Sequence record: LT603033.1
Direction: 5' to 3' (one strand)
DNA: 64,000 nt
Made by a program: the position numbers and the translations under genes. Below are positions 1 to 23,591 of this stretch, piece by piece; the stretch's first letter is position 1, and the number at the start of each line of letters is the position of its first letter. Under the pieces are notes generated by a model that saw nothing but the letters and a program-made list of their open reading frames with translations, made no database searches and was not told where the DNA came from.

Positions 1-966
1 ATAACTACTGGCATTTAAACCAGTTGCATATACACCAGTACTCGTAACTAGTATACTAGATTGTGTTGGGTATCCTGTATGAATTGAATACAAAGTTCCA
101 GTTGGTAATGTCGTACTATTGCTCCCTAATACAGCAAGTGCCGAACTGGTTGTGGTATTGTTACCCCATGCACCATTACTCGCTAAACCACCAACTAGAA
201 ACTGACGTGCACCAGAACTTGGATTCTCAACCAAAGCACTGACTGCACCACTTGAGCATCCAGTGTATTGTAACGTTTTTGTGTATGTTGTACTTGGTTT
301 ATATAAAGTATATTCATTAAATGGTGTCCATGTGGTACTGGTACTTATACCTGACGTACCACCACCAATATATAAATTATTTTGTGTATCAAAAAACATT
401 ACACAGTTATTTGTTGACTGTATTTGTGCAATATCAACATTAGGCGTGACAGCTTTTACAAATGATCCATCTGTTATTTGTTGAGTACTACCAGTACCAT
501 CAGCGAATTGTCTAGCCCCACTCCAACCAGTACTCCATATTGTATTATTATCCATTAATACCGTAAACCACGTAGTACCTCCATACATCTGTTTAATTGA
601 AGTACTTGAACTTTGCGTGTACAAATTTTCAATATATTGGTTATAACTTAAAAACGTAGTAGTACTAGTTGGTAAACCAACATGATCACCATATCCACAA
701 TAAAAATAATTTGAGTCATTGTCTTTTACTAATAAAGTTCCTTGTGTAAGCCAGCAATCGTTAACGTTTTCTCTAATTAATGTCCATGATTTTAATGCAG
801 TGTTGTTTCCTCTACCGAATTTCCCAAAACTATTATTCCCACGTGCATATAGTTGACCATCCGTATACAGAACCACAACATCTAAATCAGTTGGGATTAT
901 TTTCTTAATTTGAAGTGGTACTGGGGCAATATTCCCATAATTCATCATTCTTGCAAAAGGTAACAT
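1..966 (-). CDS. RCC1/BLIP-II-like repeat protein (3' end outside window)
   Basis: ATG at 966 after GGAGG RBS; reads MLPFARMMNYGNIAPVPLQIKKIIPTDLDVVVLYTDGQLYARGNNSFGKFGRG; same N-terminus as the 7 neighbours; missed by the ORF track because the stop is off-window. Confidence 0.85.
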   Translation of the reverse strand, partial: MLPFARMMNYGNIAPVPLQIKKIIPTDLDVVVLYTDGQLYARGNNSFGKFGRGNNTALKSWTLIRENVNDCWLTQGTLLVKDNDSNYFYCGYGDHVGLPTSTTTFLSYNQYIENLYTQSSSTSIKQMYGGTTWFTVLMDNNTIWSTGWSGARQFADGTGSTQQITDGSFVKAVTPNVDIAQIQSTNNCVMFFDTQNNLYIGGGTSGISTSTTWTPFNEYTLYKPSTTYTKTLQYTGCSSGAVSALVENPSSGARQFLVGGLASNGAWGNNTTTSSALAVLGSNSTTLPTGTLYSIHTGYPTQSSILVTSTGVYATGLNASSY

Positions 967-1035
967 AAATTCCTCCTTTATTCATTATACTATATTTAAT
1001 ACAAATAAGAAAGCCAGTACAGTGTACTGGCATTA
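922..1035 (-). repeat. RCC1-array cassette repeat (terminator + promoter + RBS + first ~15 codons)
   Basis: Hairpin GCCAGTAC-AGT-GTACTGGC at 1013-1031 followed by a T-rich tract on minus, then TAAATATAGTATAAT and AAAGGAGG-ATG. Confidence 0.85.
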
Positions 1036-1037
1036 AA

Positions 1038-2186
1038 TCATTGTATAAATGACATATCAACTTCTGTATAACTAAGAATGTTTTGTCCAGCAATTCCCCC
1101 CATTACTACCATAGCATACCCACAATAATATAATTGCTCAGTGTCCGTAAGTATAAGTGAACCAGATGGAGTGCGTACCAAATTACACGAACTATTAAAC
1201 GAAGTATACGAAGGAGTATATGAGTACTGATTAATATTATTACCAACACCTAATTGACCAAATCCATTCGACCCAGATGCGTATAGAACTTCATCACCTT
1301 TAGCTATATGTGATGCCATGTTACTAACACACGTATATAGAGTATAAACTCCTGAACTCAATAATGTCGGAGTTTTGTATTGTATATCGGTAGATGAAGA
1401 AGTACCACCTGTGCCAAATTCGTTCCCGTATTGTGCACCGAACTGTTTACCACAAGCGTACAAATTATTATCCGATTTAATAAAAAATGTACTCTGATAA
1501 CTTACATCAAAATCTATAACATCTGAAGCAATCATCGTCACCCCAGTAATAGAAGTTTGATTACCTGTACCTAACTGATAGTAATAGTTAAAACCACAAC
1601 CCCATAAAGTATTATCTTCTTTTAGGTATATGTTACCAACTGCCTTTTTAACCGAAGTTATAGTATCTACCCTTTTGAATGTGTTAAAAGAATTAATGTT
1701 TGTACCATCACCAAATGATGATAGGTTCGAGTTATTGTTAACTCCACAACAATACAACGTACCATCGTTTGTTATCAAATTCACCTTCATATCATTAAAA
1801 CTACTCATGTATTTTATATCAGAAACATTAATACCACCTGATGTTATCCACGTAGTACAGTCCGTCCACAAAGTTTTTGTATCAGTTACACCAGTGAATG
1901 CCTTCGTGTTACCAGTGATAAAAACTTTTCCAGTACCTTTCTCTTCATACAATTGACAACTACTACTGTTATCTTCCAATAGAACTCGTTTAACATTCTC
2001 TGCACAAAGAATAAATTTACTCGATGCTACACCTGTTCCAGTACCCCAATTCGTCGCAGAAGATGCATACAACTTATTAGTATAAGTATCATGAAGATAC
2101 ATAGAATCACTTGAATATATTTTAAAACGCCTATCCTTACCAGGGGCAATATTCCCATAATTCATCATTCTTGCAAAAGGTAACAT
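1038..2186 (-). CDS. RCC1/BLIP-II-like beta-propeller repeat protein
   Basis: 382 aa; GxNxxGQLGxG repeats (GFNYYYQLGTG, GSNGFGQLGVG); MLPFARM N-terminus. Confidence 0.85.
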   Translation of the reverse strand: MLPFARMMNYGNIAPGKDRRFKIYSSDSMYLHDTYTNKLYASSATNWGTGTGVASSKFILCAENVKRVLLEDNSSSCQLYEEKGTGKVFITGNTKAFTGVTDTKTLWTDCTTWITSGGINVSDIKYMSSFNDMKVNLITNDGTLYCCGVNNNSNLSSFGDGTNINSFNTFKRVDTITSVKKAVGNIYLKEDNTLWGCGFNYYYQLGTGNQTSITGVTMIASDVIDFDVSYQSTFFIKSDNNLYACGKQFGAQYGNEFGTGGTSSSTDIQYKTPTLLSSGVYTLYTCVSNMASHIAKGDEVLYASGSNGFGQLGVGNNINQYSYTPSYTSFNSSCNLVRTPSGSLILTDTEQLYYCGYAMVVMGGIAGQNILSYTEVDMSFIQ

Positions 2187-2255
2187 ATTTCCCTCCTTTA
2201 TTCATTATACTATATTTAATACAAATAAGAAAGCCAGTACAGTGTACTGGCATTA
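2142..2255 (-). repeat. RCC1-array cassette repeat
   Basis: Near-identical to 922-1035; hairpin at 2233-2251. Confidence 0.85.
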
Positions 2256-2257
2256 TA

Positions 2258-3397
2258 TTATTTCCACGGTAGAAGTGAATCAGGAACCCTTGTTGGTACA
2301 GTAGTTGAAGACATTCCAGTAAGATTGGGTACACCACATGTGTATAAATTATTATATTCGTCAACTAACATCGTATAAGAATAGCTCTTACAAAAACTAC
2401 TAAGATTACTATCTTCTAATGCAGTAAGATCCATTTCAGCGAATGATGTTATATACATATCAGTTGTACCAATACCACATTGACCATTTGAATTAAGGCC
2501 ACATGAAAATAACTTATTATTATTATTAATTATACAGGATGGTCCGGTAAGGTTTGTCCCAAGCTCACCCACCAACTCCACTTCTCCTTGGAATGATAAA
2601 TTTGGAATTAATGTACTCATTGGGGCTACTGACCTATTTCCTGTACCTGCTTGTCCATAGTCGTTAATAGATGCAACTTTAACATTACCATCATTAAGAA
2701 ATATATAAGAAGTTTCATTTGTATTGACTGCTTTAATTGCATTACTAATCGAAGTATCTTGTGTAAATGTGAGCAAGTTTTGTGTCGTCGTTCCTGATAC
2801 AAACGTTCTACCTGCATACCAATATGAACCATCATTTAGTACTAATCCAGTACTATATATTGCACAACCAGCACTGATAACATTTTCTATTGTACTATAG
2901 GTGAATCGTGAAACGCTTGAAGTTGATCCATTCCCAAAAACACCACCAGTACCAGCACCACAGTAGAACCACTTTCCATTTTTTAAAAATACACGCATAC
3001 ACGAAGATATCACAACACTATCAATATCATCTGCACTGACACCGAAATCAGTAAAGTTCTGTGTTATATCAACCCAAACGCCGTTAGTGTTTGAAGATAG
3101 TATTGGAATAACAGTACGTCTACCAGTGTACCAAATAGTACCATCTTTCTTTATAGCAATTGTTCCTTGTACCCCACCCCAATATCGTGTAACATTTGAG
3201 TTGACAAGAGTCCATTCAGTTGAAGAGTCCAATGAACCATTACCACTTTGTCCATATGCTGAAGAACCAAACCAATATAGATTGCCATTTGTGTGTAAAT
3301 AAAATTTGGCATCAGCAGAACATTGTAACCTGTTTTTAGGTAGAATCAGTTCAGGTGCGATATTCCCGTACTTAACCATTCTTGCAAAAGGTAACAT
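2258..3397 (-). CDS. RCC1/BLIP-II-like beta-propeller repeat protein
   Basis: Start trimmed to the conserved MLPFARM ATG behind the RBS; repeats GSSAYGQSGNG, GLNSNGQCGIG. Confidence 0.85.
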   Translation of the reverse strand: MLPFARMVKYGNIAPELILPKNRLQCSADAKFYLHTNGNLYWFGSSAYGQSGNGSLDSSTEWTLVNSNVTRYWGGVQGTIAIKKDGTIWYTGRRTVIPILSSNTNGVWVDITQNFTDFGVSADDIDSVVISSCMRVFLKNGKWFYCGAGTGGVFGNGSTSSVSRFTYSTIENVISAGCAIYSTGLVLNDGSYWYAGRTFVSGTTTQNLLTFTQDTSISNAIKAVNTNETSYIFLNDGNVKVASINDYGQAGTGNRSVAPMSTLIPNLSFQGEVELVGELGTNLTGPSCIINNNNKLFSCGLNSNGQCGIGTTDMYITSFAEMDLTALEDSNLSSFCKSYSYTMLVDEYNNLYTCGVPNLTGMSSTTVPTRVPDSLLPWK

Positions 3398-3465
3398 ATT
3401 CCCTCCTTTATTTGTTATACTATATTTAATACAAATAAGAAAGCCAGTACAGTGTACTGGCATTA
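3352..3465 (-). repeat. RCC1-array cassette repeat
   Basis: Same cassette; hairpin at 3443-3461. Confidence 0.85.
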
Positions 3466-3467
3466 TG

Positions 3468-4577
3468 TTATTTTGGTAAATCAATTTTAGTAAAGACTGC
3501 AACATCCTCGATTGCACCTGGAATGGCGTAATACGATCCAGTACTATACACATCTCCATTTTTGGTTAATATCGATGTCAAACCATCACTAAAAAGAACA
3601 TCCCTAATCTCACTAACTTCAACGGGTAATTGTAAATTGGTAGCACTATATATAGCACCAGTTTGAGAATTGTTTAATCCCAAACCACGGTTCGCCCCAA
3701 CACCCTTCTGATATGTACTAGTAATTACCATTTGTGTAGCAGTATTTAAGGCAGGTGAATTCGTCATAAACAATGGAGAACTATTAGGCAAAGTACTTAA
3801 AGGAACTGCACGGAATGTAGTCGTACCTGAACTAAGAAAGTTTGGAGTTTGACCACATACGAAATATGATGTACCATTATAGTAATTTAATGCATTACCA
3901 CCAATGGCTGCATCGATTACACCAGAACTACGCAATCCCCAAGTGTTAATTTGTGTTTGGTTCCCCGTACCATGCTGCCCACTACTATTCCATCCAGAAC
4001 TATATAGCTTATTATCTAATGTAAGATACATACTATCATTCGCATTGGTCATTACTTTACGAACGTTCGTAGCACATTGAGTTAATGTGTAAATTGATGA
4101 GGAACCAATACCCAAAGAACCACGATATCCATTATCTCCTGCACCATAGAGTACTGAATTAGTGCTAAGTACAAATATTAAACCATTTGTACATACAATA
4201 TTAGCAATTTCACTTACTGGTATAGCATTGGTAAACCAATTAGTTCTTTCAACTAATACAGTACTGTAAGAAGTAGTTGTAGAAGATGAGAACCAGTACG
4301 TTTGACCTGATGTCCATATCGTATTATCATTTTTAATAATAACAAGTGTACGATCACCCACGAAAAAATTAGAAACATCTGCACTTACTAATGTCCACGA
4401 AGACACCGTGTTGGTATTACCATTTCCAGATTCACCACCTTGATTTCTACCTATGTAATATAAATCATGTGAATCAGTCAATAAGAATTGGCCTTGGGTA
4501 GAAGCACCAACTTTAATTATTTTTTTAGGACCAGGGACAATATTTCCATACCTAATCATTCTTCCAAAAGGTAACAT
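3468..4577 (-). CDS. RCC1/BLIP-II-like beta-propeller repeat protein
   Basis: Start trimmed to MLPFGRM; repeats GRNQGGESGNG, GWNSSGQHGTG. Confidence 0.85.
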   Translation of the reverse strand: MLPFGRMIRYGNIVPGPKKIIKVGASTQGQFLLTDSHDLYYIGRNQGGESGNGNTNTVSSWTLVSADVSNFFVGDRTLVIIKNDNTIWTSGQTYWFSSSTTTSYSTVLVERTNWFTNAIPVSEIANIVCTNGLIFVLSTNSVLYGAGDNGYRGSLGIGSSSIYTLTQCATNVRKVMTNANDSMYLTLDNKLYSSGWNSSGQHGTGNQTQINTWGLRSSGVIDAAIGGNALNYYNGTSYFVCGQTPNFLSSGTTTFRAVPLSTLPNSSPLFMTNSPALNTATQMVITSTYQKGVGANRGLGLNNSQTGAIYSATNLQLPVEVSEIRDVLFSDGLTSILTKNGDVYSTGSYYAIPGAIEDVAVFTKIDLPK

Positions 4578-4585
4578 ATTCCCTC

Positions 4586-5788
4586 CTATTGTTGCCATAA
4601 CTGCGTTGGCATTAATGTTAGTGTAGTAATACTATAAGTACCATTAGGTAATCTACCACCATTTCCATTCCAGCCACCACATGCATATAATTTATAATCT
4701 TTAGTAATTATTATGGTTCTGCTCCAATCTTTAGATGCCATAAGAACATTGTCATAACCACCACTTATTGCACTAAGATTAAAAATATTCCAAGTTCTAA
4801 CTAATGTATTAGTTCCATTACCTTCTTGACCATATGAGTTAGCACCACTACTTCTAACATATGGTGCGTATTGTGCCATAGGTGCACCAATTGATGCATT
4901 TCCCATATTACTTGGACAAATAAAAGTACTGTACTTACTTACATCAACCGTGACCGATGTGTTCCTAATTGGTGTTAGCTGATTTACCGATGTAGTCGTA
5001 CCATTACCAGCTTGTCCAGTACTGTTAGCCCCGCTATAATATACAGACCCACCAGTAGTAAACCACCAAGTAACATCGTATGTAGTACTAATATGTTCTA
5101 CATTACTAATCACGAATTTGTTCAAATATACAACAGAACTACCACCACATCCACTTTCACCAAAGTTATCCTTACCACAAAACCATGCATCTTTATTTGA
5201 TTTGATATAGTGCGTTCCTTGTAATGAACATGCCATATGTGTAACTTCACCCATATTAGTCATAACTGTGAGTGTAGGGATGGAATTTTTATTACCAGAG
5301 CCACATTCACCATTGGTATTTCTTCCACACGCAATTACTCTACCATCGGTTAATAATATTCTAGTACTTTCACCTATATATACACTCTTGATCATATTAG
5401 CCATAACACCTATTTTATTAAATGCAACAGTAACATCAGTCCATGTTGTCAAATAACCATTAACAGGTGTTGCATCTCCATAATCAGAAAATGCACCCAC
5501 AGACCCAGTGTAGTATATTTTATTATCCAAATCAATCATCAATGAACCTTGAACACCAAGCCAAAAGGCTGCACAGTTCCTTGCAAGTACTGTAAATGAC
5601 GAAACTGCTGCTGAATTCCCAAGACCAAATTGATAAAAGTTATTACTACCATAACCATATAAAGTATTAGTTGGGTTATGGAGATACATACAGTTTGTAT
5701 AATGTTGTTGTAAAACATCTGAGAACTCTACAGGTTCTGGACCTGGTGCAATATTTGCGTACTTAACCATTCTTCCAAAAGGTAACAT
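4586..5788 (-). CDS. RCC1/BLIP-II-like beta-propeller repeat protein
   Basis: 400 aa; repeats GSNNFYQFGLG, GRNTNGECGSG, GANSYGQEGNG. Confidence 0.85.
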   Translation of the reverse strand: MLPFGRMVKYANIAPGPEPVEFSDVLQQHYTNCMYLHNPTNTLYGYGSNNFYQFGLGNSAAVSSFTVLARNCAAFWLGVQGSLMIDLDNKIYYTGSVGAFSDYGDATPVNGYLTTWTDVTVAFNKIGVMANMIKSVYIGESTRILLTDGRVIACGRNTNGECGSGNKNSIPTLTVMTNMGEVTHMACSLQGTHYIKSNKDAWFCGKDNFGESGCGGSSVVYLNKFVISNVEHISTTYDVTWWFTTGGSVYYSGANSTGQAGNGTTTSVNQLTPIRNTSVTVDVSKYSTFICPSNMGNASIGAPMAQYAPYVRSSGANSYGQEGNGTNTLVRTWNIFNLSAISGGYDNVLMASKDWSRTIIITKDYKLYACGGWNGNGGRLPNGTYSITTLTLMPTQLWQQ

Positions 5789-5855
5789 ATTTCCCTCCTT
5801 TATTCATTATACTATATTTAATACAAAAAGAAATGCCAGTATCAAGTACTGGCAT
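5741..5855 (-). repeat. RCC1-array cassette repeat
   Basis: Same cassette; hairpin ATGCCAGTA-TCAAG-TACTGGCAT at 5833-5855. Confidence 0.85.
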
Positions 5856-5859
5856 AATA

Positions 5860-7038
5860 TTATCGGTTAAATTTAAAATCTGTTATGTGTGTCCATGTAT
5901 GATTTAATGGGGTACTCATTGGTGTAAAGCCAGCAGGGTCTGACCACGTTGAACCACATGCGTACATAAATTGATTGCCAGTACAATCCATTATAGCATA
6001 AGAACGTGTTGCTGTACCACATTTGAATCCAACTGCACTACTTGGGGTCGGTAATACTTCAAATGTAGGTGCATTTGAAGTATTACCCCCATTTTTTGTT
6101 CCAGCTATGTACAGAACTCCATTAGTATCAATGATTAAGTTAGTCCAATATGCTTGTTCTCGACCAGCATAAAAATATGTTAAATCACCGGGTACAAATG
6201 GTAACGTACCTTTATATAGTGTAGTATTAACATCCACTGGTGCTCCAGATACACCCCATGAACTCATATAGTTTCTCCCACTTGCGTAGAATGTAGTTCC
6301 TTTACCGTAAAGTATTAATGTTGCATGACTTGTTCGCATTGCATTATATTCAAACTCAGGATCATCAGTAGCGTCCTTAAAAATCTGTGTCCATGTTGTT
6401 ATATAGCCAGTAGTTGTAACACCCATTTGATAATAATAATTATCACCAGTAGCATAGAATTGTTTAGGGCCAGTTTGTACAATTGCATTCCTATTAGTTA
6501 ACCAAAAATCTAATGTATTAGTCATGATCTTGGTGGGTGTGAAATTCGCCACGGTATTTCCTTTTCCGAAATAACCCTTAGCGTTATCTCCATGACCCCA
6601 TAAATCACCATTAGTTGTGCGTAGGAATAATGTACCAGAATTGAATACAACTTTTTCTATAGTACTTATATCAATACCAACAGAAGTGTAATTCGTTGTA
6701 AAATCTTGAAAAGTACCCCAAAAATTAGATGAACCCTTAAACATGACTTGACTACCAGCGTACTTCACTTTATTATCTTTAGTGATAAGTAATGTCCCCC
6801 ACGATGCCGCGAACATTAACTTAACATTTTCCATAACAAAGTATGGCTTACCGTATGCTGACGCGGTAGAGTTCAAACCTAATAGTTGTCTATTATTACT
6901 ACAACCCCATACTTCGCCGTTATCCAAAAGCATCAACATAGTAGGTTTACCAGATAATACAGACAAAAAGAAATCTTTTGGTGTTGGTACACCAGGTGCA
7001 ATATTCCCATAATCAAACATTCTAACAAAAGGTAACAT
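5860..7038 (-). CDS. RCC1/BLIP-II-like beta-propeller repeat protein
   Basis: Start trimmed to MLPFVRM; repeats GDNAKGYFGKG, GDNYYYQMGV. Confidence 0.8.
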   Translation of the reverse strand: MLPFVRMFDYGNIAPGVPTPKDFFLSVLSGKPTMLMLLDNGEVWGCSNNRQLLGLNSTASAYGKPYFVMENVKLMFAASWGTLLITKDNKVKYAGSQVMFKGSSNFWGTFQDFTTNYTSVGIDISTIEKVVFNSGTLFLRTTNGDLWGHGDNAKGYFGKGNTVANFTPTKIMTNTLDFWLTNRNAIVQTGPKQFYATGDNYYYQMGVTTTGYITTWTQIFKDATDDPEFEYNAMRTSHATLILYGKGTTFYASGRNYMSSWGVSGAPVDVNTTLYKGTLPFVPGDLTYFYAGREQAYWTNLIIDTNGVLYIAGTKNGGNTSNAPTFEVLPTPSSAVGFKCGTATRSYAIMDCTGNQFMYACGSTWSDPAGFTPMSTPLNHTWTHITDFKFNR

Positions 7039-7103
7039 AATTCCTCCTTTATTCATTATACTATATTTAATCAAAAAGAAAAGCCAGTATCAAGTACTGG
7101 CAT
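6991..7103 (-). repeat. RCC1-array cassette repeat
   Basis: Same cassette; hairpin at 7083-7101. Confidence 0.85.
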
Positions 7104-7107
7104 CGTA

Positions 7108-8217
7108 TTACTTGGGTAATGGAATTGTGGTCCATCTATTTGCGGCAACGTCACCTGGTACATATGTAGGACTACCACTTACAGCAATAGTTTCATTACC
7201 ATCATATACAACACTGAAGTTTGTGCACGTATACAACGCTGCGGCATCTGGATTGTAATTTTCAAGTGTTAGTGTATTGGTGAACAAATTCAATGCAGTA
7301 GTTGAGCCGTTTTTACCATATGCACCTGTAGTATATATCTTTCCTTCTGTTGTTGAGTACATATTAACATATGACCCAGATGATGATTTAGCAATTTTAT
7401 CTATCTTGCTATCTATTGTTTTAGAGTTAAATTGAAATGGATATACCTGTACGTTAGTATCTAAACCATTTCCCAGTTCCCCATTTAACTGCCACCCTGT
7501 GTGGTACATTCCCGCATTTGTATATGCAAGCGTACTATACGCATTACCACCCATTATTTTAGTGCCAGATAATTTTAAACCAAACGATGTCCACTTACCA
7601 GTTTCATTTCCTATGGAACCATAAGCACTTGTACCACACGCACGAAGCTCGCCATTTGACGTTAGAAGCACTGTATTATTAACGTTACCAAATATATCAA
7701 TAACCTGATTAGTGCCATTATTCAGTACTGAAGTAAAAGTACTCTGTGAGTAAGTACTACCTGAACCAACAGAACCATTTGTGTTCATACCTCTTCCATA
7801 TACAATTTTACCATCAGCACTAACATAGTGCATTGAATCAAAACCAATGGATATCATTTTAATATCAGATATATCTGGAAATGAAGAAGTTACATCTACT
7901 CCACCTAGTGGAATTGTATTATTTCCTAAACCTAATGAGACATTAGTTCCGTGCATTATAAATTTATCTTCTTTAAAATATAAAATATTATATCCACCAG
8001 CCCATGCATTATTAACGCCATTTGTAATCAGTACCCATTTATTTTGTGTAGTAGTTCCAGTAATATTTAACTGTTGATAGTTATTGATTCCACAACCATA
8101 TAGCGATCCATCACCATATAGTACATATAAATTATCATATCCTGCAATAACTTTCTTTATTTTTTTGGGTACAGGTGCTACATTCCCATACTTTAACATT
8201 CTTCCAAAAGGTAACAT
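7108..8217 (-). CDS. RCC1/BLIP-II-like beta-propeller repeat protein
   Basis: 369 aa; repeats GINNYQQLNI, GMNTNGSVGSG, GWQLNGELGNG. Confidence 0.85.
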   Translation of the reverse strand: MLPFGRMLKYGNVAPVPKKIKKVIAGYDNLYVLYGDGSLYGCGINNYQQLNITGTTTQNKWVLITNGVNNAWAGGYNILYFKEDKFIMHGTNVSLGLGNNTIPLGGVDVTSSFPDISDIKMISIGFDSMHYVSADGKIVYGRGMNTNGSVGSGSTYSQSTFTSVLNNGTNQVIDIFGNVNNTVLLTSNGELRACGTSAYGSIGNETGKWTSFGLKLSGTKIMGGNAYSTLAYTNAGMYHTGWQLNGELGNGLDTNVQVYPFQFNSKTIDSKIDKIAKSSSGSYVNMYSTTEGKIYTTGAYGKNGSTTALNLFTNTLTLENYNPDAAALYTCTNFSVVYDGNETIAVSGSPTYVPGDVAANRWTTIPLPK

Positions 8218-8282
8218 TATTTTCTCCTTTATTCATTATACTATATTTAATACAAAAAGAAATGCCAGTATCAAGTACTGGC
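8171..8282 (-). repeat. RCC1-array cassette repeat
   Basis: Same cassette; hairpin at 8264-8282. Confidence 0.85.
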
Positions 8283-8288
8283 CTGTAT

Positions 8289-9425
8289 TTAAATTATTGT
8301 TGGTAATGGTAATGGTATAAATTCATCACTCGATGGCAAACCATATAACGTAGTTGCATTTCCAGAATAATACCATCCCGTTGAATCTTGCACTATAGAT
8401 AGATAGGCTAACGATGCCGCCTTTGTTATATCATTAAACCCGTGTGGTACTTCTTTAAATGTAGATGAATATTCAACACCAGGGTCACCAGAAGATAGTG
8501 TAGTGTTAGTACCAGCATAATATAAAGTATTGCCATCTGTGCTTATAGCAAAAGAAAGAACAGAGTTATTCATATCACTCCACAAATCCCTAAACCTGCC
8601 TCTATATCCGGTTAATTCTGTATACGAATATACGTTTGTGGTATTTGAAGAAGAATTACCTAGTTGATAATTTCTATTTTGACCTGCTATAACATATCTA
8701 GTGCTACCATTAGTATCATAATATAATATACCAGAGTTTAATGTTGACATACCAACTGCACATTCGGATGCAAATTCGGGAGCAGAGTACAAATTATAAG
8801 AAGTTAAATTTGTGCTAGTACCCAATGCTCCAGTATTGCTTATACCACAGCGGTAGTAACCACCAGTAGTACTAGAATATATAGTACCAGGTAGAGAAGT
8901 GTAGAATTTTGAAACATTTGACGCAACTAATACAGCATTAACTTTGCTTGTTGAACCACCAAATGTTTGGTTATTATCATATCCTTTAGCATATAATCTA
9001 TTATCATTTGTAAGTAATCCTACACAATAATAAGTCATTTTCATTTCACGTACTGTGCTTAGATTCACTGCACTAAATTGTGTCGTAACATCTTTCCATG
9101 TAACAACTTTAGAACTTGTCGAACCACCAGATTCAAACCATTCATCACCACAGTAGAAAATTTTATTATCTACAGTTAATACAACGCATACTAAATTACT
9201 AGCACAAGCAAACTTAACATCATCTCTAACTTTAGTCCACTCGGTTACATTCACTATAGTATCAGTTCCTATACCTAATTTGCCATACGCATTATTACCA
9301 CGCACCCATAATTCATTATCCTCGGTTATTAGTAATAATGAATTAGTACCTGCAACAATATCACGAACTTTTAGTTTTTCTGGTGCTACGTTCCCATAAT
9401 TTAACATTCTAACAAAAGGTAACAT
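8289..9425 (-). CDS. RCC1/BLIP-II-like beta-propeller repeat protein
   Basis: Start trimmed to MLPFVRM; repeats GNNAYGKLGIG, GQNRNYQLGN. Confidence 0.85.
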   Translation of the reverse strand: MLPFVRMLNYGNVAPEKLKVRDIVAGTNSLLLITEDNELWVRGNNAYGKLGIGTDTIVNVTEWTKVRDDVKFACASNLVCVVLTVDNKIFYCGDEWFESGGSTSSKVVTWKDVTTQFSAVNLSTVREMKMTYYCVGLLTNDNRLYAKGYDNNQTFGGSTSKVNAVLVASNVSKFYTSLPGTIYSSTTGGYYRCGISNTGALGTSTNLTSYNLYSAPEFASECAVGMSTLNSGILYYDTNGSTRYVIAGQNRNYQLGNSSSNTTNVYSYTELTGYRGRFRDLWSDMNNSVLSFAISTDGNTLYYAGTNTTLSSGDPGVEYSSTFKEVPHGFNDITKAASLAYLSIVQDSTGWYYSGNATTLYGLPSSDEFIPLPLPTII

Positions 9426-9473
9426 AAATCCCTCCTTATTCATTATATCATATTTACCCCATAAAGAAAACCC

Positions 9474-9502
9474 TTGACATCCTTTCAGTACTGGTGTACT
9501 AT
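9474..9502 (+). promoter_or_regulatory. sigma70-type promoter for the family A cluster
   Basis: TTGACA-17 nt-TACTAT, divergent from the RCC1 array. Confidence 0.7.
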
Positions 9503-9527
9503 AGAAGGAATATAAGGAGAACTACAC

Positions 9528-9755
9528 ATGACAAATACTCTTAAGTACTACCTCAATACTCTAAATGAACTAGAGTACGGGGAATTTCTCGCGGATAGTT
9601 CGTGGCTAATTGAGCTAAAAAATTATAATAGTCCAGGATGCACCCTTATGATGAACAATGCAATTGATACCCTCATTGTGAGTATTTTACACAGCAACAT
9701 CTGCGGGGATAGCAATAAACAATTATCAAAAATCTTAGTACTGCTATCTATATGA
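9528..9755 (+). CDS. small hypothetical protein, family A (divergent)
   Basis: AGGAG RBS; KYYLNTL N-terminus, hydrophobic C-terminus. Confidence 0.75.
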   Translation: MTNTLKYYLNTLNELEYGEFLADSSWLIELKNYNSPGCTLMMNNAIDTLIVSILHSNICGDSNKQLSKILVLLSI

Positions 9756-9955
9756 ATATCGAACAGTACTACATCGATGCACTACCAACAAAAGGTCTAC
9801 GTGAAAGCCTACTGCATACACAAACTAATTTCAAACACCTCAAACGTAGCCCTAAACTCCTGAACTCGTACAGGAATAATAACATAAGAAATGCTTTACA
9901 AGGGGTAGAATGTATGCAATACTATTACATCCTTACCCTATTAATCGAGTACTAA
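9752..9955 (+). CDS. small hypothetical protein, family A
   Basis: EQYYIDALP ... YYYILTLLIEY; ATGA overlap. Confidence 0.8.
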   Translation: MNIEQYYIDALPTKGLRESLLHTQTNFKHLKRSPKLLNSYRNNNIRNALQGVECMQYYYILTLLIEY

Positions 9956-9956
9956 T

Positions 9957-10166
9957 ATGAATACTGAACATAAAGAATTCTACACCAAATACCTTAGCAA
10001 CGAAGAACAATTGTTTCTAAGGAGTGTATCACCTGTAAGTACCAATACTCAATTCGGTAGAGATTGCTTTAATAATTGTATACGTAGTACTCTAGAAGCA
10101 ATCGAATGCAATAACAAAAATATTATGTACTCAGGTTTAATAGGACTAATATATTTCTATGAATAA
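9957..10166 (+). CDS. small hypothetical protein, family A
   Basis: HKEFY; close paralog of 13333-13542. Confidence 0.8.
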   Translation: MNTEHKEFYTKYLSNEEQLFLRSVSPVSTNTQFGRDCFNNCIRSTLEAIECNNKNIMYSGLIGLIYFYE

Positions 10167-10353
10167 TCATAAAGATTTCTATTGTAGTAAACTACCCAAA
10201 CAAGAACAGCTATCATTCTCTTTAGCACCACCTATGAGAAAGGATAATCTGTATTATAATTACGATTTCAGGATAGAGACACGTGATGCAATAGAACATA
10301 CGTTCCCTGCAACTAAGTACCGCTCTATCCTGAACCTCATCTTTAAGTTCTAA
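10159..10353 (+). CDS. small hypothetical protein, family A
   Basis: MNNHKDFY ... ILNLIFKF. Confidence 0.8.
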   Translation: MNNHKDFYCSKLPKQEQLSFSLAPPMRKDNLYYNYDFRIETRDAIEHTFPATKYRSILNLIFKF

Positions 10354-10363
10354 AAGGTGCTAT

Positions 10364-10573
10364 ATGAAAACTACAAACATTCATCAGTACTACATAGATA
10401 TTCTCCCTAAAGATGTACAGTTCATACTTAAACAAGAATTCAGTACTTTAAAAAAACTAAAAAGAACCGCACCTTCAGCAATCATCCAGCACCAAAAAAA
10501 TGTCGTGCGTAATATACTACAAGGTACACCAGGGACCGAGTACTTTAATATAGTAAGGCTAATTACATTATAA
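10364..10573 (+). CDS. small hypothetical protein, family A
   Basis: HQYYIDILP; paralog of 9752-9955. Confidence 0.8.
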   Translation: MKTTNIHQYYIDILPKDVQFILKQEFSTLKKLKRTAPSAIIQHQKNVVRNILQGTPGTEYFNIVRLITL

Positions 10574-10758
10574 TGAATCATATAAGCTACTACTACCAAC
10601 AACTATCCGACAGAGACAAGTACAGTCACAACTCTCATGTGTGGTACTACAAACGCGGCAGTATAAGAGACAAACAACATTACTTCTGTGTTTCTATTAA
10701 AGAAGCACTTACAACTAAGTACACGTACCGAGCAGTACTTAAACTTATTGAAATGTAA
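10573..10758 (+). CDS. small hypothetical protein, family A
   Basis: SYYYQQL ... YTYRAVLKLI. Confidence 0.8.
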   Translation: MNHISYYYQQLSDRDKYSHNSHVWYYKRGSIRDKQHYFCVSIKEALTTKYTYRAVLKLIEM

Positions 10759-10765
10759 GGAAGAC

Positions 10766-10954
10766 ATGAACACTTTTGAGTACTACTTCAATAAACTAAG
10801 CTCCATAGAACAACAGATGCATAACTCATATATTAAGCACTATCAATCATCTGTACCTGAAATTAAAAACATATCGATTGAGGTTATCACTGACAGGGTA
10901 CTGTCATCGGAACGTTATATGTATATTGATGTACTGAAACTAATCTCTATATAA
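10766..10954 (+). CDS. small hypothetical protein, family A
   Basis: Start trimmed to MNTFEYYF behind AAGGA; ends VLKLISI. Confidence 0.8.
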   Translation: MNTFEYYFNKLSSIEQQMHNSYIKHYQSSVPEIKNISIEVITDRVLSSERYMYIDVLKLISI

Positions 10955-10962
10955 GGAATAAA

Positions 10963-11145
10963 ATGAACATAGAATTCTATTTAACTAAACTACAACACGC
11001 CGAAAGATTCAACTTCAATAAGTTCAATATTTTCTACAATTGCGGGAACAAAAAAGATAAACACACCTTCCTATATGTCGTCACAAGAGATGCACAAAAC
11101 GAAAAGTACACATACAGAGAAGTAATGAAACTAATCTCTATATAA
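10963..11145 (+). CDS. small hypothetical protein, family A
   Basis: MNIEFYL ... YREVMKLISI. Confidence 0.8.
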   Translation: MNIEFYLTKLQHAERFNFNKFNIFYNCGNKKDKHTFLYVVTRDAQNEKYTYREVMKLISI

Positions 11146-11153
11146 GGAATACT

Positions 11154-11333
11154 ATGCAACAATTCTATATAGAACGTATAACCATAAAAGACCGTTTCAT
11201 GTACGACACATTCGTTGATTACTACAAACTAGGAACAAAAAGTACTAAAAATATTAATCTCAATAGCTGCATTTATGCTGTACTAACACAAGATAATCCC
11301 TACAGGGAAATCCTCGCCCTGGCATCTATATAA
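11154..11333 (+). CDS. small hypothetical protein, family A
   Basis: 59 aa, below the ORF-track cutoff; MQQFYIE ... YREILALASI; AAGGA RBS. Confidence 0.75.
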   Translation: MQQFYIERITIKDRFMYDTFVDYYKLGTKSTKNINLNSCIYAVLTQDNPYREILALASI

Positions 11334-11343
11334 AGGAAACCAA

Positions 11344-12015
11344 ATGAAACTTAATGCACACAGCAAACAATACCTTAAGCACTTTAAGTACCTCAATAGT
11401 ATTCAGGCAGAATCAGTTACATCTGCATATACGTATCACCCGAATGTACTAAAGAAACGAAATAAAAAGGAAAAATCCAGTACAAATGGAGTTAACGTAT
11501 CAAAGAACCTTGAATTGTACATGAAGAAAAATAATATAGCTGTTCATTATATGAATATCTATAATACTGATTTAAAAGTATTGAGTACTAATACGAGCAC
11601 AAAGGTACTAAAGAACGCATCCTTCATCATCAATATGCAGTTGGATAATACCCCGTGCACTTTAATGCTATACTTCGGGAATACATACTTCTTCGGGAAT
11701 TGTAACACCTCCCACGATGTCAATACAGCACAATTCCAAATGGGTGGCATATACTCTACTGATGCAGAAAAAGTACACGAGAATATGCACTTCTGGCAAG
11801 CACAACGTACAGAAGAAACTGATACAGTACTGCAATTCCTCAAAGAACTAGAACACAAAGAACTACAGGAAGAAGAACTATTCATGTACAGTACTGTAAT
11901 CGATAATCCAGTACTCTATAAAAACGCGTACAATCTGACAAAACATGTACAGGAAATTATCAGTACTAATAAGAAAATGCATCACCTCATTACGTATATT
12001 ACAAACTATGTATAA
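11344..12015 (+). CDS. hypothetical protein carrying the family C motif (EEELFMYSTV)
   Basis: 223 aa; motif near the C-terminus as in the 40.9-64 kb proteins. Confidence 0.8.
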   Translation: MKLNAHSKQYLKHFKYLNSIQAESVTSAYTYHPNVLKKRNKKEKSSTNGVNVSKNLELYMKKNNIAVHYMNIYNTDLKVLSTNTSTKVLKNASFIINMQLDNTPCTLMLYFGNTYFFGNCNTSHDVNTAQFQMGGIYSTDAEKVHENMHFWQAQRTEETDTVLQFLKELEHKELQEEELFMYSTVIDNPVLYKNAYNLTKHVQEIISTNKKMHHLITYITNYV

Positions 12016-12190
12016 AGAATACTACCAAGAACATCTCCCAATGCATCTCCAACACCTTGTACCCAAAGAACCAATAGGAATAAAAGATCACGCAAAAATA
12101 ATGTTCCAACAATGTACTAAGTACACGCTCATATACGATGATAATCCATATATGCTGTACTACGTAGTAATGCTAACATTCAGGTACTAA
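12008..12190 (+). CDS. small hypothetical protein, family A
   Basis: Start trimmed to MYKEYY; ends LTFRY. Confidence 0.8.
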   Translation: MYKEYYQEHLPMHLQHLVPKEPIGIKDHAKIMFQQCTKYTLIYDDNPYMLYYVVMLTFRY

Positions 12191-12191
12191 T

Positions 12192-12371
12192 ATGCACAAA
12201 CATAAAGAATTCTACCTCTCGTACCTTAATTCCGATATAGTAACATCCAATACCTTCAGTACTAAAATTATCTATAATGAATTAATAAAAGAATGTATTA
12301 AAGGTGCTATTAACCCTAAAGATACGTATGACTTGTACTATGCAGTACTAACCCTTGTTTTCACGAAATAA
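12192..12371 (+). CDS. small hypothetical protein, family A
   Basis: 59 aa, not in track; MHKHKEFYL ... YYAVLTLVFTK. Confidence 0.75.
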   Translation: MHKHKEFYLSYLNSDIVTSNTFSTKIIYNELIKECIKGAINPKDTYDLYYAVLTLVFTK

Positions 12372-12379
12372 CACATAAT

Positions 12380-12571
12380 ATGAATAACCACAAAGAATAC
12401 TACATAGAGAAACTCCCAATGTATCTCCAACACCTTGTACCAAACGTTGCATTGGGTATAGAAAAAAACTACGAAAAAGACTACTTCATTCAGTGCACTA
12501 AATCCTCGATATATATTGACGACTATAATCGAGTACTGTATCACATCCTTTTACTAATATATAGGTACTAA
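12380..12571 (+). CDS. small hypothetical protein, family A
   Basis: MNNHKEYY ... LLLIYRY. Confidence 0.8.
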   Translation: MNNHKEYYIEKLPMYLQHLVPNVALGIEKNYEKDYFIQCTKSSIYIDDYNRVLYHILLLIYRY

Positions 12572-12572
12572 T

Positions 12573-12755
12573 ATGCACAAAGAATACTACACACAATTTC
12601 TCCCCAGCATTTTTGAACACTACGCCAGATACAAAGTCCCTATGGATAACGATTTGGCAGTACTGGGATTCAATAACTGCATAGAACGAAGTATAGAAAA
12701 TAGTAGTAGTTATGACCAGCTATATAACACTATCCTACTTATATTCAGGTACTAA
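12573..12755 (+). CDS. small hypothetical protein, family A
   Basis: MHKEYY ... LLIFRY. Confidence 0.8.
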   Translation: MHKEYYTQFLPSIFEHYARYKVPMDNDLAVLGFNNCIERSIENSSSYDQLYNTILLIFRY

Positions 12756-12756
12756 C

Positions 12757-12945
12757 ATGCATAAAGAATACTACACAAAATATTTCCCAATGTACCTCAG
12801 AACTAATCTATTAGATAAACCTCGCGGTATCAATGCACAAAATGATAAAGTGTACTTTACTATGTGCACTAAAGCATGTATACTAGATTTTGACAGCTAT
12901 CATCGAGTACTGTATCATACCCTGTACCTAGCTTTCGTATTCTAA
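12757..12945 (+). CDS. small hypothetical protein, family A
   Basis: Start trimmed to MHKEYY. Confidence 0.8.
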   Translation: MHKEYYTKYFPMYLRTNLLDKPRGINAQNDKVYFTMCTKACILDFDSYHRVLYHTLYLAFVF

Positions 12946-12954
12946 GAGAACAAT

Positions 12955-13140
12955 ATGCATAAAGAATTCTACTTAAGCCATCTCGATCTAAACTCCCAAA
13001 TGCTTATACCACTAATCCCAATAGATATCAAGGATAAGAAAAATACCGAACAATTCATTTACCATACACAGTGTGCGATCACCCCAAATTACATTCCATA
13101 TGAATTGTACTACATTATCGCCCTAATATATAGGTACTAA
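12955..13140 (+). CDS. small hypothetical protein, family A
   Basis: MHKEFY ... ALIYRY. Confidence 0.8.
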   Translation: MHKEFYLSHLDLNSQMLIPLIPIDIKDKKNTEQFIYHTQCAITPNYIPYELYYIIALIYRY

Positions 13141-13141
13141 T

Positions 13142-13327
13142 ATGCATAGAGAATACTACACACAATTTGTTAAAGGGAACTACAAACATGCCGTACCCAG
13201 AACCCCTTTAAATTCTCATGACCCAAGTACTATATTCTTGTTCCATGACGCAATACGTACAGTACTCAATACTAAAGATGAAGATGTGCAGTACGTATTC
13301 TTACTATTACTTATATACAGACACTAA
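13142..13327 (+). CDS. small hypothetical protein, family A
   Basis: MHREYY ... LLIYRH. Confidence 0.8.
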   Translation: MHREYYTQFVKGNYKHAVPRTPLNSHDPSTIFLFHDAIRTVLNTKDEDVQYVFLLLLIYRH

Positions 13328-13332
13328 CTAAT

Positions 13333-13542
13333 ATGAATAAAGAACATAAAGAATTCTACTCCAAATACATAAGCCCCTCAGAACAAATGTTTCTAAGGAC
13401 TACTCCACCTTTAAGTACTAATACATTTTTCGGCAGAGTATGCTACAATAATTGTATTCAAATGACTTTAAACGCAAACGAAGATGGTAACAGTACTAAC
13501 CTGTACTCAGGTATCATAGGTATACTATTCCTGTATGAATAA
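13333..13542 (+). CDS. small hypothetical protein, family A
   Basis: MNKEHKEFY; close paralog of 9957-10166. Confidence 0.8.
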   Translation: MNKEHKEFYSKYISPSEQMFLRTTPPLSTNTFFGRVCYNNCIQMTLNANEDGNSTNLYSGIIGILFLYE

Positions 13543-13723
13543 TTACAAAGACTTCTATTTGAATACACTACCTACTGTACTTTCTCTAAGTGCTCAATGT
13601 AAAATCCCCCTGGATAATGCTTACGCCAGATATAGCTATTCCATAACTGTTAATCGATGTATAGAGAATCATTGCAGTACTAACCAGTACTATAACATAA
13701 TCCTACTTATATTCAGGTACTAA
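13535..13723 (+). CDS. small hypothetical protein, family A
   Basis: MNNYKDFY ... LLIFRY. Confidence 0.8.
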   Translation: MNNYKDFYLNTLPTVLSLSAQCKIPLDNAYARYSYSITVNRCIENHCSTNQYYNIILLIFRY

Positions 13724-13724
13724 T

Positions 13725-13907: not shown

Positions 13908-13922
13908 TTAATAGAGAATACT

Positions 13923-14509: not shown

Positions 14510-14655
14510 ATGCCACTAAGTAGGCAGAGGAAGTCTGCCGTACTTTGTAGTTTCCAAGCTCCTTTTCCATTTTGCAAATTACATCAAATGTAATCAAAAG
14601 TAATCACGCAATGATTAGTACTGAATTATTACTTTCACCTTAATTACAATTACCC

Positions 14656-23589: not shown

Positions 23590-23591
23590 AA

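What the first reader, a model, noticed from the sequence alone, without database searches (positions are those of the whole stretch)
1..9425. Cassette-like array of 8 RCC1-type propellers with one invariant N-terminal tag and self-contained expression units
Seen: all 8 genes begin MLPF(A/G/V)RMxxY(G/A)N(I/V)(A/V)P while the propeller bodies are highly divergent. At 6 of the 7 junctions a roughly 115-bp block recurs: terminator hairpin, TAAATATAGTATAAT, AAAGGAGG-like RBS and the first ~15 codons. Known: RCC1/BLIP-II repeats form 7-bladed protein-binding propellers. Inference: the tag may be a shared docking or assembly signal (for example for the virion baseplate or tail) that makes the propellers interchangeable binding modules. 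The repeats would allow unequal crossover to add, delete or swap whole expression units, much like an integron without an integrase.
Basis: partly seen in the sequence, partly recalled or inferred. Interest (0 to 1): 0.75.

Follow-up and report, generated by a model that had tools for sequence, protein, structure and literature searches.

The report
Tagged virion-protein cassette array, jumbo phage
A giant E. coli phage carries a row of very different propeller-shaped binding proteins that all start with the same 12-residue label; published particle proteomics of related phages find proteins with this label in the particle, and whole genes are swapped between phages by recombination at a repeated block that includes the label.

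Summary
Eight minus-strand genes (ATG at 966, 2186, 3397, 4577, 5788, 7038, 8217, 9425) all begin MLPFxRMxxY(G/A)N. Six of the seven junctions carry a roughly 120-nt block: hairpin with T-run, TATTAAATATAGTATAAT, GGAGG, then the tag codons.

The window is identical to Asteriusvirus phage slurp01, whose array has 13 tagged ORFs; the window cuts it.

The tag is not specific to RCC1 proteins. In related jumbo phages of other genera it also heads Kelch propellers, LamG lectin domains and other proteins, and the upstream DNA there is not conserved.

Published virion proteomics detect 8 of 11 tagged proteins in phAPEC6 and 9 of 11 in CBB. CBB virion peptides cover tag residues 7-20, so that part is retained. 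AlphaFold2 models the tag as a free tail on a confident 7-bladed RCC1-like propeller.

Arrays of nine related phages differ in cassette content and order. Every homology breakpoint lies between -72 and +51 of a start codon.

Best reading: a portable virion-incorporation tag, plus shuffling by homologous recombination at PeSL-like blocks. The docking partner, the location on or in the virion, and the promoter class remain unknown. It is not an integron, and nothing supports a DNA-condensation role.

The parts
1..966 (-). Cassette C: RCC1-like propeller gene, 3' end cut off by the window start (396 aa in slurp01)
967..1031 (-). Full junction block A|C: hairpin 1013-1031 with T-run, promoter-like motif 984-998, GGAGG at -10..-6
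1038..2186 (-). Cassette A: RCC1-like propeller, 382 aa. Its ortholog in phAPEC6 (gp549) was detected in virions.
2187..2251 (-). Full junction block D|A (hairpin 2233-2251, motif 2204-2218)
2258..3397 (-). Cassette D: RCC1-like propeller, 379 aa
3398..3461 (-). Full junction block B|D (hairpin 3443-3461, motif 3414-3428 with 1 mismatch)
3468..4577 (-). Cassette B: RCC1-like propeller, 369 aa
4578..4585 (-). Short junction F|B: stop codon, GGAGG, ATG; no hairpin and no promoter-like motif. F and B stay adjacent in six genomes.
4586..5788 (-). Cassette F: RCC1-like propeller, 400 aa
5789..5855 (-). Full junction block J|F (hairpin 5833-5855, motif 5806-5820)
5860..7038 (-). Cassette J: RCC1-like propeller, 392 aa
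7039..7101 (-). Full junction block I|J (hairpin 7083-7101, motif 7055-7069)
7108..8217 (-). Cassette I: RCC1-like propeller, 369 aa. AlphaFold2 model has pLDDT 92; residues 1-13 are disordered.
8218..8282 (-). Full junction block P|I (hairpin 8264-8282, motif 8235-8249). It is the breakpoint of the cassette-P indel relative to SHEFM2K and E9.1.
8289..9425 (-). Cassette P: first gene of the array, RCC1-like propeller, 378 aa
9426..9472 (-). Region upstream of the first cassette: RBS and promoter-like motif TAAATATGATATAAT (9442-9456), but no terminator hairpin. It lies in the divergent intergenic region facing the + strand small-gene array.
922..966 (-). Tag codons 1-15 of cassette C. Equivalent tag stretches: 2142-2186, 3353-3397, 4533-4577, 5744-5788, 6994-7038, 8173-8217, 9381-9425.

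Best explanation
The region is the 5' two-thirds of a hyperplastic locus in an Asteriusvirus jumbo myophage (identical to slurp01). The locus encodes a changeable set of virion-associated binding modules. Each gene encodes a 7-bladed RCC1-like propeller preceded by a flexible N-terminal address tag (core MLPFxRMxxYGN, then a Pro/Gly linker). I infer that the tag is a retained docking peptide that loads any protein carrying it onto or into the virion at a common, probably multi-copy, site. I favour an exposed site such as the capsid or tail hairs or a decoration layer, but this is unproven. Each cassette is a separate expression unit: an intrinsic-terminator-like hairpin, an AT-rich promoter-like motif, a strong RBS and the tag codons. 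Because this roughly 120-nt block is 82-95% identical between cassettes, homologous recombination within it deletes, inserts, replaces and reorders whole cassettes and homogenises the tags within a genome. Shown: the anatomy, the fold, the breakpoints, virion presence of tagged proteins in related phages, and tag residues 7-20 in virion peptides. Inferred: the docking function, the location, promoter activity and timing, and what the modules bind.
For: Anatomy. Fold: Pfam RCC1 hits; AlphaFold2 pLDDT 92 and pTM 0.90 with residues 1-13 below pLDDT 50; Foldseek matches to UVR8, HERC2 RLD, RPGR and RCC1 at TM about 0.8. Generic RCC1 homologs align only from about profile position 19, so the tag is not part of the domain. 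The tag is portable and selected at the protein level. It heads Kelch, LamG, phrog_6011 and phrog_4474 proteins and 670-aa RCC1+Kelch fusions in Mimasvirus, Eneladusvirus and uncultivated 350-380 kb contigs, with unrelated upstream DNA. Pro3 is CCT in Asteriusvirus but CCA elsewhere, and Tyr10, Gly11 and Pro15 vary synonymously. Virion link: phAPEC6 gp549, 551, 003, 005, 006, 007, 009 and 010 are array members and were found by virion MS (PMC7247149 Table 1), giving 8 of 11, p=2e-6. In CBB, 9 of 11 tagged genes are virion MS hits, including the two scattered genes CBB_144 and CBB_247, p=2e-8 (PMC5259590 Table 4). GAP32 gp1 is also a virion protein. Retention: CBB virion peptides LFEYANVIIPPNYK, LLQYGNK and YANVIVEYATK lie within tags. 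Shuffling: nine arrays hold 40 body types in different orders. All homology boundaries fall between -72 and +51 of a start codon. Contigs from four other runs break and re-join at the same blocks. The variable tag residues follow the genome rather than the body, for example VRMFD in Turkey3 and ARMVK in 121Q. The F-B pair, which lacks a full block between its genes, stays adjacent in six genomes.
Against: No partner for the tag is known, and the one complex prediction tried gave no answer. No virion proteomics exists for this phage itself; the evidence comes from phAPEC6 (same genus) and CBB/GAP32 (other genera). No peptide covering tag residues 1-6 was found, so the first residues could be removed or modified. 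Virion association could be a property of the bodies rather than of the tag. The promoter is unverified: there is no -35, the motif differs by one inserted base from the phage's late-type ATAAATA motif, and it differs from the consensus early promoters. Within Asteriusvirus, codons 1-7 are almost invariant even at synonymous sites, which by itself fits DNA-level homogenisation.
Confidence: 0.6

Rival explanations
1. The tag is a capsid-targeting sequence. On this view the tagged proteins are internal head (inner-body) or ejected proteins, loaded through the scaffold as T4 internal proteins are through their CTS. The variable array would then be an arsenal injected with the DNA, for example inhibitors of host defence enzymes.
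For: T4 internal proteins are a diverse set that share only a conserved CTS (PMC3012670). phAPEC6 and 121Q show an inner body whose components are unknown, and the phAPEC6 authors proposed the RCC1 proteins for it. The proteins are in virions at modest peptide counts. BLIP-II, a structural relative, is a tight protein inhibitor. Turnover between near-identical phages fits an arms race.
Against: The tag is not removed as a T4 CTS is: peptides spanning residues 7-20 are in virions, including across an L-F-E site. The proteins are neutral, pI 5.0-8.2, and not basic. LamG and Kelch partners of the tag are typical surface binding modules. A Pro/Gly linker after a free tail suits a tethered external module. 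None of this excludes an internal site.
Confidence: 0.25
2. The tag has no protein-level function. It is conserved only because the first 45 nt belong to the repeated DNA block (recombination substrate, translation-initiation region) and are homogenised by gene conversion.
For: Codons 1-4 and 6-7 are almost invariant at synonymous sites within Asteriusvirus. Crossovers map inside the tag codons. Tag variants are homogenised within genomes.
Against: The same peptide is kept in other genera where the upstream DNA and codons differ (Pro3 CCA versus CCT). It is also kept on unrelated folds and on scattered single genes such as CBB_144 and CBB_247, which are not in arrays. Y10, G11 and P15 vary synonymously while the residue is kept.
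Confidence: 0.07
3. The tag is a recognition signal for something other than the virion: a phage chaperone, a modifying enzyme, or a protease that removes only the first few residues. Virion incorporation would then depend on the bodies.
For: No peptide with residues 1-6 was seen, not even the expected 13-residue N-terminal tryptic peptide of CBB_144.
Against: Bodies of at least five unrelated folds would each need their own virion contact. The enrichment in virions follows the tag, not the fold.
Confidence: 0.08

Closest known systems
PeSL (promoter-early stem-loop) regulatory cassettes of T4-type phages (Arbiol et al. 2010, PMC2839356; PMC4122927)
   Same: A repeated intergenic module runs from the upstream stop codon through a stem-loop terminator and a promoter to the SD and start codon. 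It is concentrated in hyperplastic regions. Recombination between copies causes the insertions, deletions and replacements that distinguish close relatives (searches compared).
   Different: Here the repeat extends 45 nt into the coding sequence and carries a protein tag. The promoter-like part lacks a -35 and is not the phage's consensus early promoter. The genes encode virion proteins of about 40 kDa rather than early ORFans. Mini-circles were not examined. The same phage also has true sigma70-promoter-plus-hairpin elements in its early region.
T4 internal proteins with the capsid targeting sequence (CTS) (PMC3012670)
   Same: A short conserved N-terminal leader is the only feature shared by otherwise unrelated, fast-evolving proteins that end up in the virion. 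The leader is portable in T4.
   Different: There is no sequence similarity to the T4 CTS (from my knowledge of that sequence). The tag is not cleaved off at residues 7-20. The proteins are large, neutral propellers or lectins. An internal location is unproven.
Modular receptor-binding and decoration proteins with a conserved N-terminal anchor and a variable distal domain (tailspikes and fibres of many phages; the adenovirus fibre tail motif that docks on the penton base); from general knowledge, not tested here
   Same: A conserved N-terminus for attachment is combined with a highly variable binding domain, and modules are exchanged between relatives.
   Different: The anchor here is only 12-15 residues. 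The bodies are predicted monomeric propellers, not trimeric fibres. There are 10-17 different modules per genome. The attachment site is unknown.
Integron
   Same: A linear array of exchangeable single-gene cassettes separated by repeats.
   Different: There is no integrase gene among the array ORFs, no attI or attC, no single Pc promoter, and the cassettes carry their own promoter-like and terminator elements. Exchange is by general homologous recombination.
RCC1 / RLD / BLIP-II beta-propellers
   Same: Pfam repeat hits and a 7-bladed fold, with TM about 0.8 to UVR8, HERC2 RLD, RPGR and RCC1.
   Different: There is no evidence of chromatin or Ran function. The database label 'DNA condensation protein' comes only from the family name, and the proteins are not basic. 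The N-terminal tag is absent from generic RCC1 homologs.

Membership tests
RCC1-like domain (RLD) beta-propeller | RCC1 repeat sequence signature | tested here: met
   All 8 proteins hit PF25390, PF13540 or PF00415 at E 1e-9 to 3e-30, although below the whole-domain gathering score of PF25390.
RCC1-like domain (RLD) beta-propeller | Seven-bladed propeller fold | tested here: met
   The AlphaFold2 model of gene I has pLDDT 92 and pTM 0.90. Foldseek E is about 1e-21, TM 0.8 to UVR8 and 0.7 to HERC2 RLD, RPGR and RCC1.
RCC1-like domain (RLD) beta-propeller | Chromatin/Ran-type function ('chromosome condensation') | not testable with these tools
   No supporting feature was found; pI is 5.0-8.2.
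PeSL-type mobile regulatory cassette | Repeated intergenic module: stop codon, stem-loop, promoter, SD, start codon | tested here: met
   Six full blocks, compared with the description in PMC2839356.
PeSL-type mobile regulatory cassette | Strong sigma70-consensus early promoter (-35 and -10) | tested here: not met
   TATAAT is present but there is no -35. The sigma70 scan found no more sites than shuffles. The phage's own early promoters, TTGACA-N14-TGTATAAT, lie elsewhere.
PeSL-type mobile regulatory cassette | Copies mark the borders of indels and replacements between close relatives | tested here: met
   All boundaries lie between -72 and +51 of a start codon. Contig joints are at the same blocks.
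PeSL-type mobile regulatory cassette | Excised mini-circles | not tested
   Only contigs were available, not raw reads.
Integron | Tyrosine-recombinase integrase (intI) next to the array | tested here: not met
   ORFs in and beside the array are propellers or small proteins with no Pfam hit. The flanks in slurp01 are annotated as hypothetical small proteins. No dedicated integrase search was run.
Integron | attC recombination sites and promoterless cassettes read from one Pc | tested here: not met
   The junctions are terminator-like hairpins plus a promoter-like motif and an RBS for each gene.
T4-type CTS internal proteins | Short conserved N-terminal leader on otherwise unrelated virion proteins | tested here: met
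T4-type CTS internal proteins | Leader removed by the prohead protease | tested here: not met
   Virion peptides cover tag residues 7-20 in CBB_536, 7-13 in CBB_553 and 10-20 in CBB_548. Residues 1-6 were not observed, so their fate is open.
T4-type CTS internal proteins | Location inside the head | not testable with these tools
   The inner body seen in phAPEC6 is unassigned.

The most novel reading that the evidence does not exclude
MLPFxR(I/L/M)xxYGN is a universal plug of Rak2-like jumbo phages. On this reading any protein carrying it (RCC1 or Kelch propeller, LamG lectin and others) is mounted on one multi-copy socket on the virion surface, such as the unexplained 'hairs' or capsid fibres. 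Each phage would then wear a strain-specific, recombination-shuffled coat of 10-17 different binding modules. That would be a combinatorial adhesin display system, and a natural short tag for loading foreign proteins onto jumbo phage particles.
Probability: 0.35. Interest if true: 0.8.

Novelty: new variant of a known kind. Interest (0 to 1): 0.62.

Why it matters
The 'DNA condensation / RCC1' genes of Rak2-like jumbo phages have been noted as puzzling multi-copy virion proteins. The hairs and the inner body of these phages have no assigned proteins (PMC7247149, PMC5259590).

A short, lineage-wide address tag that predicts virion association on at least five unrelated folds gives a concrete, testable handle on how these particles acquire accessory binding modules. 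It may also help identify the hairs or the inner body.

The locus is also a clear case outside the classical T4-like phages of modular shuffling at composite terminator-promoter repeats. Here the repeats extend into the coding sequence, so the recombination site and the protein's address label are the same piece of DNA. If the tag proves portable, it would be a simple tool for displaying or packaging proteins on jumbo phages.

No paper in the searched library mentions the motif.

Tried and rejected
- **Own assembly.** The window's own assembly is not held, so I used 121Q (G001) and GenBank records instead.
- **Word-based homolog search.** It returned only 8 proteins.
- **Whole-library profile search.** It was swamped by giant multi-RCC1 proteins. 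It served only to show that generic homologs align from about profile position 19.
- **Complex prediction.** Complex prediction of gene I with the abundant virion paralogs gp210 and gp211 (121Q copies) gave no verdict. This is not evidence either way.
- **Functional link to neighbouring genes.** I looked for a link to the neighbouring small-protein genes through synteny with CBB. slurp01_00136 and CBB_547 are not homologous and have no Pfam hits, so the idea was dropped.
- **Sigma70 promoter at the junctions.** Not supported: 40 sites found against 50.9 in shuffles, and no -35.
- **Late-promoter assignment.** Unresolved. ATAAATA precedes the MCP and other structural genes in 121Q, but the array has TATTAAATA.
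- **RNA evidence.** Public RNA runs are held only as contigs, so no transcript starts could be read.
- **Sheath Pfam search in 121Q.** It found nothing.
- **Readings rejected.** Integron (no integrase or attC). A T4-type cleaved CTS (tag peptides are present in virions). A DNA-condensing basic protein (pI 5-8). The tag as the propeller's closing strand (it is modelled as disordered and also occurs on non-propeller folds).
- **R-L-R-L repeat in phAPEC6.** The two copies are identical apart from differences confined to the first ~80 aligned nt (the junction region), and they sit at the record's start and end. This could be a very recent duplication or an assembly artefact, so I did not use it as evidence.
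Full report
**1. Observation**

The minus strand of window 1-9425 holds eight ORFs with ATG at 9425, 8217, 7038, 5788, 4577, 3397, 2186 and 966. The last one runs off the window start. All eight begin MLPF(A/G/V)RMxxY(G/A)N(I/V)(A/V)P, and all hit Pfam RCC1-type models.

Upstream of six of them lies a block made of:
- the stop codon of the previous gene;
- a 7-9 bp GC-rich hairpin, GCCAGTAC...GTACTGGC, followed by a T-run;
- TATTAAATATAGTATAAT;
- GAATAAAGGAGG, then 5 nt to the ATG.

The hairpins are picked up by the terminator scan (12 sites against 3.9 in shuffles; six lie at the junctions). They fold at -10 to -12.4 kcal/mol, z -3.1 to -4.8. The 15-nt motif occurs seven times in the array with up to 2 mismatches; the whole window has 9 such matches against 1.86 expected.

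Counted from -75 to +45, the six full blocks are 82-95% identical (repeat families). The junction between genes F and B (4578-4585) is only stop, GGAGG and ATG. The first gene, P, keeps the RBS and a 2-mismatch copy of the motif but has no hairpin.

In an alignment of 17 paralogs the bodies are about 20% identical. The only invariant columns are M1 L2 P3 F4 R6 Y10 N12 and one glycine in each of six blades.

**2. Source and true extent**

The DNA is an Asteriusvirus, a Rak2-like jumbo myophage of E. coli. It is 100% identical over 10 kb to phage slurp01. In slurp01 the array continues beyond the window start and has 13 tagged ORFs, two of them truncated. In the 121Q genome the tag occurs only in the array: 12 ORFs, none elsewhere.

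**3. The proteins**

AlphaFold2 on gene I with the paralog alignment gives a confident model (pLDDT 92, pTM 0.90). It is a seven-bladed propeller whose best structural matches are UVR8, HERC2 RLDs, RPGR and RCC1; BLIP-II scores lower.

Residues 1-13 have pLDDT below 50. The tag is therefore modelled as a free tail, followed by a Pro/Gly-rich linker before the first strand.

More than 100,000 generic RCC1 homologs match the family profile, but in the listed top hits almost always only from about position 19 on, so the tag is not part of the domain. The proteins are neutral (pI 5.0-8.2). The database name 'DNA condensation protein' has no support beyond the family name.

**4. The tag is wider than RCC1 and wider than this genus**

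Within Asteriusvirus arrays the tag also heads a 245-aa non-RCC1 protein (phrog_4474) and, in Turkey3, two Kelch propellers.

In Eneladusvirus (Serratia BF, Yersinia fHe-Yen9-04, Erwinia pEa_SNUABM_12) and Mimasvirus (Xanthomonas XbC2, Pectobacterium CBB), the form MLPF(P/S/A)(R/I/Q)(L/I/M)xxY(G/A)N heads:
- RCC1 propellers;
- Kelch propellers;
- LamG/ConA-like lectin domains;
- a 'virion structural protein' family (phrog_6011);
- proteins with no family.

A degenerate DNA pattern scan of IMG/VR found real hits (ORF plus RBS) only in contigs of 348-380 kb. These include 670-aa RCC1+Kelch fusions and more LamG proteins. Hits in small contigs were chance matches without an RBS-preceded ORF (most have no ORF at all).

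In these other genera the upstream DNA is unrelated and the codons differ: Pro3 is CCA there and CCT in Asteriusvirus, and Gly11 is GGG, GGA or GGT. The peptide is therefore under protein-level selection, independent of the DNA repeat.

**5. Link to the virion**

In phAPEC6 (same genus), Table 1 of PMC7247149 lists gp549, 551, 003, 005, 006, 007, 009 and 010 in the virion. All eight are array members by coordinates and sequence. That is 8 of 11 annotated tagged ORFs against 62 of 551 overall (p=2e-6). Three further cassettes are simply not annotated in that record.

CBB has 11 tagged genes: CBB_536, 537 and 548-554, plus two scattered ones, CBB_144 and CBB_247, which sit among nucleotide-metabolism and nuclease genes. 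Nine of the 11 are in the CBB virion proteome (PMC5259590 Table 4; p=2e-8). GAP32 gp1, an RCC1 homolog, is also a virion protein.

The CBB peptide table contains LFEYANVIIPPNYK (CBB_536 residues 7-20), LLQYGNK (CBB_553 residues 7-13) and YANVIVEYATK (CBB_548 residues 10-20). At least that part of the tag is present in mature particles. No peptide with residues 1-6 was found.

**6. Junction block and promoter class**

The phage's early promoters are unmistakable: TTGACA-N14-TGTATAAT. There are eight copies on the + strand of this window at 14.9-32.5 kb (0.1 expected) and many in 121Q, often followed by a hairpin. Structural genes of 121Q, including the MCP, are preceded by ATAAATA, the late-type motif reported for CBB.

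The array blocks have neither. They carry TATTAAATA, one extra base relative to the late motif, followed by TAGTATAAT without a -35. Promoter activity and timing are therefore inferred, not shown. Public RNA data are available only as contigs.

**7. Cassette shuffling**

Bodies were clustered at 85% identity or more, giving 40 types in nine phages. Array orders, in gene direction:

| Phage | Cassette order |
|---|---|
| window | P I J F B D A C ... |
| slurp01 | P I J F B D A C n' E Q K H' |
| SHEFM2K | I J F B D A C n' E N K H' |
| E9.1 | I J F B D A C G E M K H' |
| PBECO4 | F B D A C n' E W X H' |
| 121Q | A L B D C G S E M' N O H' |
| G17 | P F B T A L C G M Q N K H' |
| Turkey3 | 16 cassettes, mostly unique types |
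| phAPEC6 | A R L R L B k l C G E M N O K H' |

The window shares 93-100% identity with the relatives' arrays over the blocks that align (Turkey3 gave no block at that threshold). Every end of a shared block lies between -72 and +51 of a start codon. Contigs of four unrelated sequencing runs also end or join at these blocks. One example is a well-anchored joint that places J directly after F.

The variable tag residues (positions 5, 8, 9) follow the genome, not the body. Body A carries ARMMN in the window, ARMVK in 121Q and VRMFD in Turkey3. This indicates gene conversion within arrays.

F and B, which have no full block between them, stay adjacent in six genomes. Truncated or frameshifted cassettes (n', M', H') show birth-and-death turnover.

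**8. Interpretation**

The best-supported model has two coupled parts.
- **Protein side.** The tag is a retained, flexible N-terminal address that brings any module carrying it into the particle. This rests on its portability across folds and genera, the enrichment of tagged proteins in two independent virion proteomes (including scattered single genes), tag peptides in virions, and the disordered-tail prediction.
- **DNA side.** The roughly 120-nt terminator / promoter-like / RBS / tag block is the substrate for homologous recombination that adds, removes, replaces and reorders whole expression units.

I favour an exposed location, because RCC1, Kelch and LamG are binding modules and the tag is followed by a linker. 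The internal (inner-body or ejected) alternative proposed by the phAPEC6 authors is not excluded. One complex prediction with abundant virion proteins gave no answer.

**9. Comparison with known systems**

On the DNA side the closest system is the PeSL of T4-type phages (PMC2839356). It has the same anatomy and the same role in modular shuffling. This block fails the defining sigma70 early-promoter feature, extends into the coding sequence, and serves virion genes.

On the protein side the closest is the T4 capsid targeting sequence shared by otherwise unrelated internal proteins (PMC3012670). The logic is the same, but here the tag is retained and the location is unknown.

It is not an integron. 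The motif is not mentioned in the searched literature. The multi-copy RCC1 genes and their virion presence were already noted.

**10. Limits**

- There is no proteomics or transcript mapping for this phage itself.
- The partner and site of the tag are unknown.
- Promoter and terminator function are inferred from sequence.
- Body clustering thresholds are arbitrary.
- De Bruijn contigs can mis-join at repeats, so one search is supporting evidence only.

Noticed in passing
window 9528-14123, + strand: A second tandem array, divergent from the propeller array. It holds about 22 small paralogous genes of 59-77 aa, often starting MxKE(F/Y)Y and ending in a hydrophobic L(I/L)(F/Y)(R/K)(Y/F)-like tail, interrupted by a 223-aa gene at 11344-12015. 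They have no Pfam hits. Copy number differs between relatives (about 9 before the 223-aa gene here, more in SHEFM2K and E9.1, where some are PHROG 11711).
   Followed up: partly
window 14884-32465, + strand: Eight perfect consensus early promoters, TTGACA-N14-T(G/A)TATAAT (0.1 expected by chance). In 121Q the same motif is often followed by a GC hairpin, giving true PeSL-like promoter-plus-stem-loop elements in the early small-gene region.
   Followed up: partly
window 14304-14519: A tandem repeat of about 60 nt, roughly 3.5 copies (it reads DSVLISIDKIAQECTEMCVN repeatedly in one frame), at the boundary between the small-gene array and the early region.
   Followed up: no
window 50106-50160: A run of 55 N (masked or an assembly gap). 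It was left untouched.
   Followed up: no
L001 (slurp01) 10056-11208 and 14889-16068: Broken cassettes. The last array gene is split into a 74-aa tagged ORF plus a 298-aa RCC1 ORF in most of the Asteriusvirus genomes compared (shorter 44- and 52-aa tagged stubs in G17 and phAPEC6; not seen in Turkey3). A second cassette (n') is a 59-aa tagged stub overlapping a 1032-nt ORF. These are pseudogenes or frameshift-dependent genes.
   Followed up: partly
L030 (phAPEC6) 2433-3543, 6062-7253, 7324-8059: Three full-length tagged cassettes (types B, C, G) are not annotated in the phAPEC6 record. The published virion proteomics could not have reported them if the search database was built from the annotated ORFs (not checked).
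   Followed up: partly
window 6050-6087, + strand (inside gene J): A 17-bp perfect inverted repeat followed by a T-run on the + strand, antisense to the propeller gene. It was flagged by the terminator scan.
   Followed up: no
L031/L030 (phAPEC6) record ends: Cassettes R and L occur twice in tandem (R L R L), with the two copies identical except in the first ~80 aligned nt (the junction region), across the start and end of the circular record. This is either a very recent unequal-crossover duplication or an assembly artefact.
   Followed up: partly
L077 (CBB) 9001-14269; also BF, XbC2, fHe-Yen9-04: In Mimasvirus and Eneladusvirus the tagged genes cluster at the right end of the deposited genomes (next to the terminal repeat in CBB). 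They are packed with 8-15 nt spacers and lack the terminator-promoter block seen in Asteriusvirus.
   Followed up: partly
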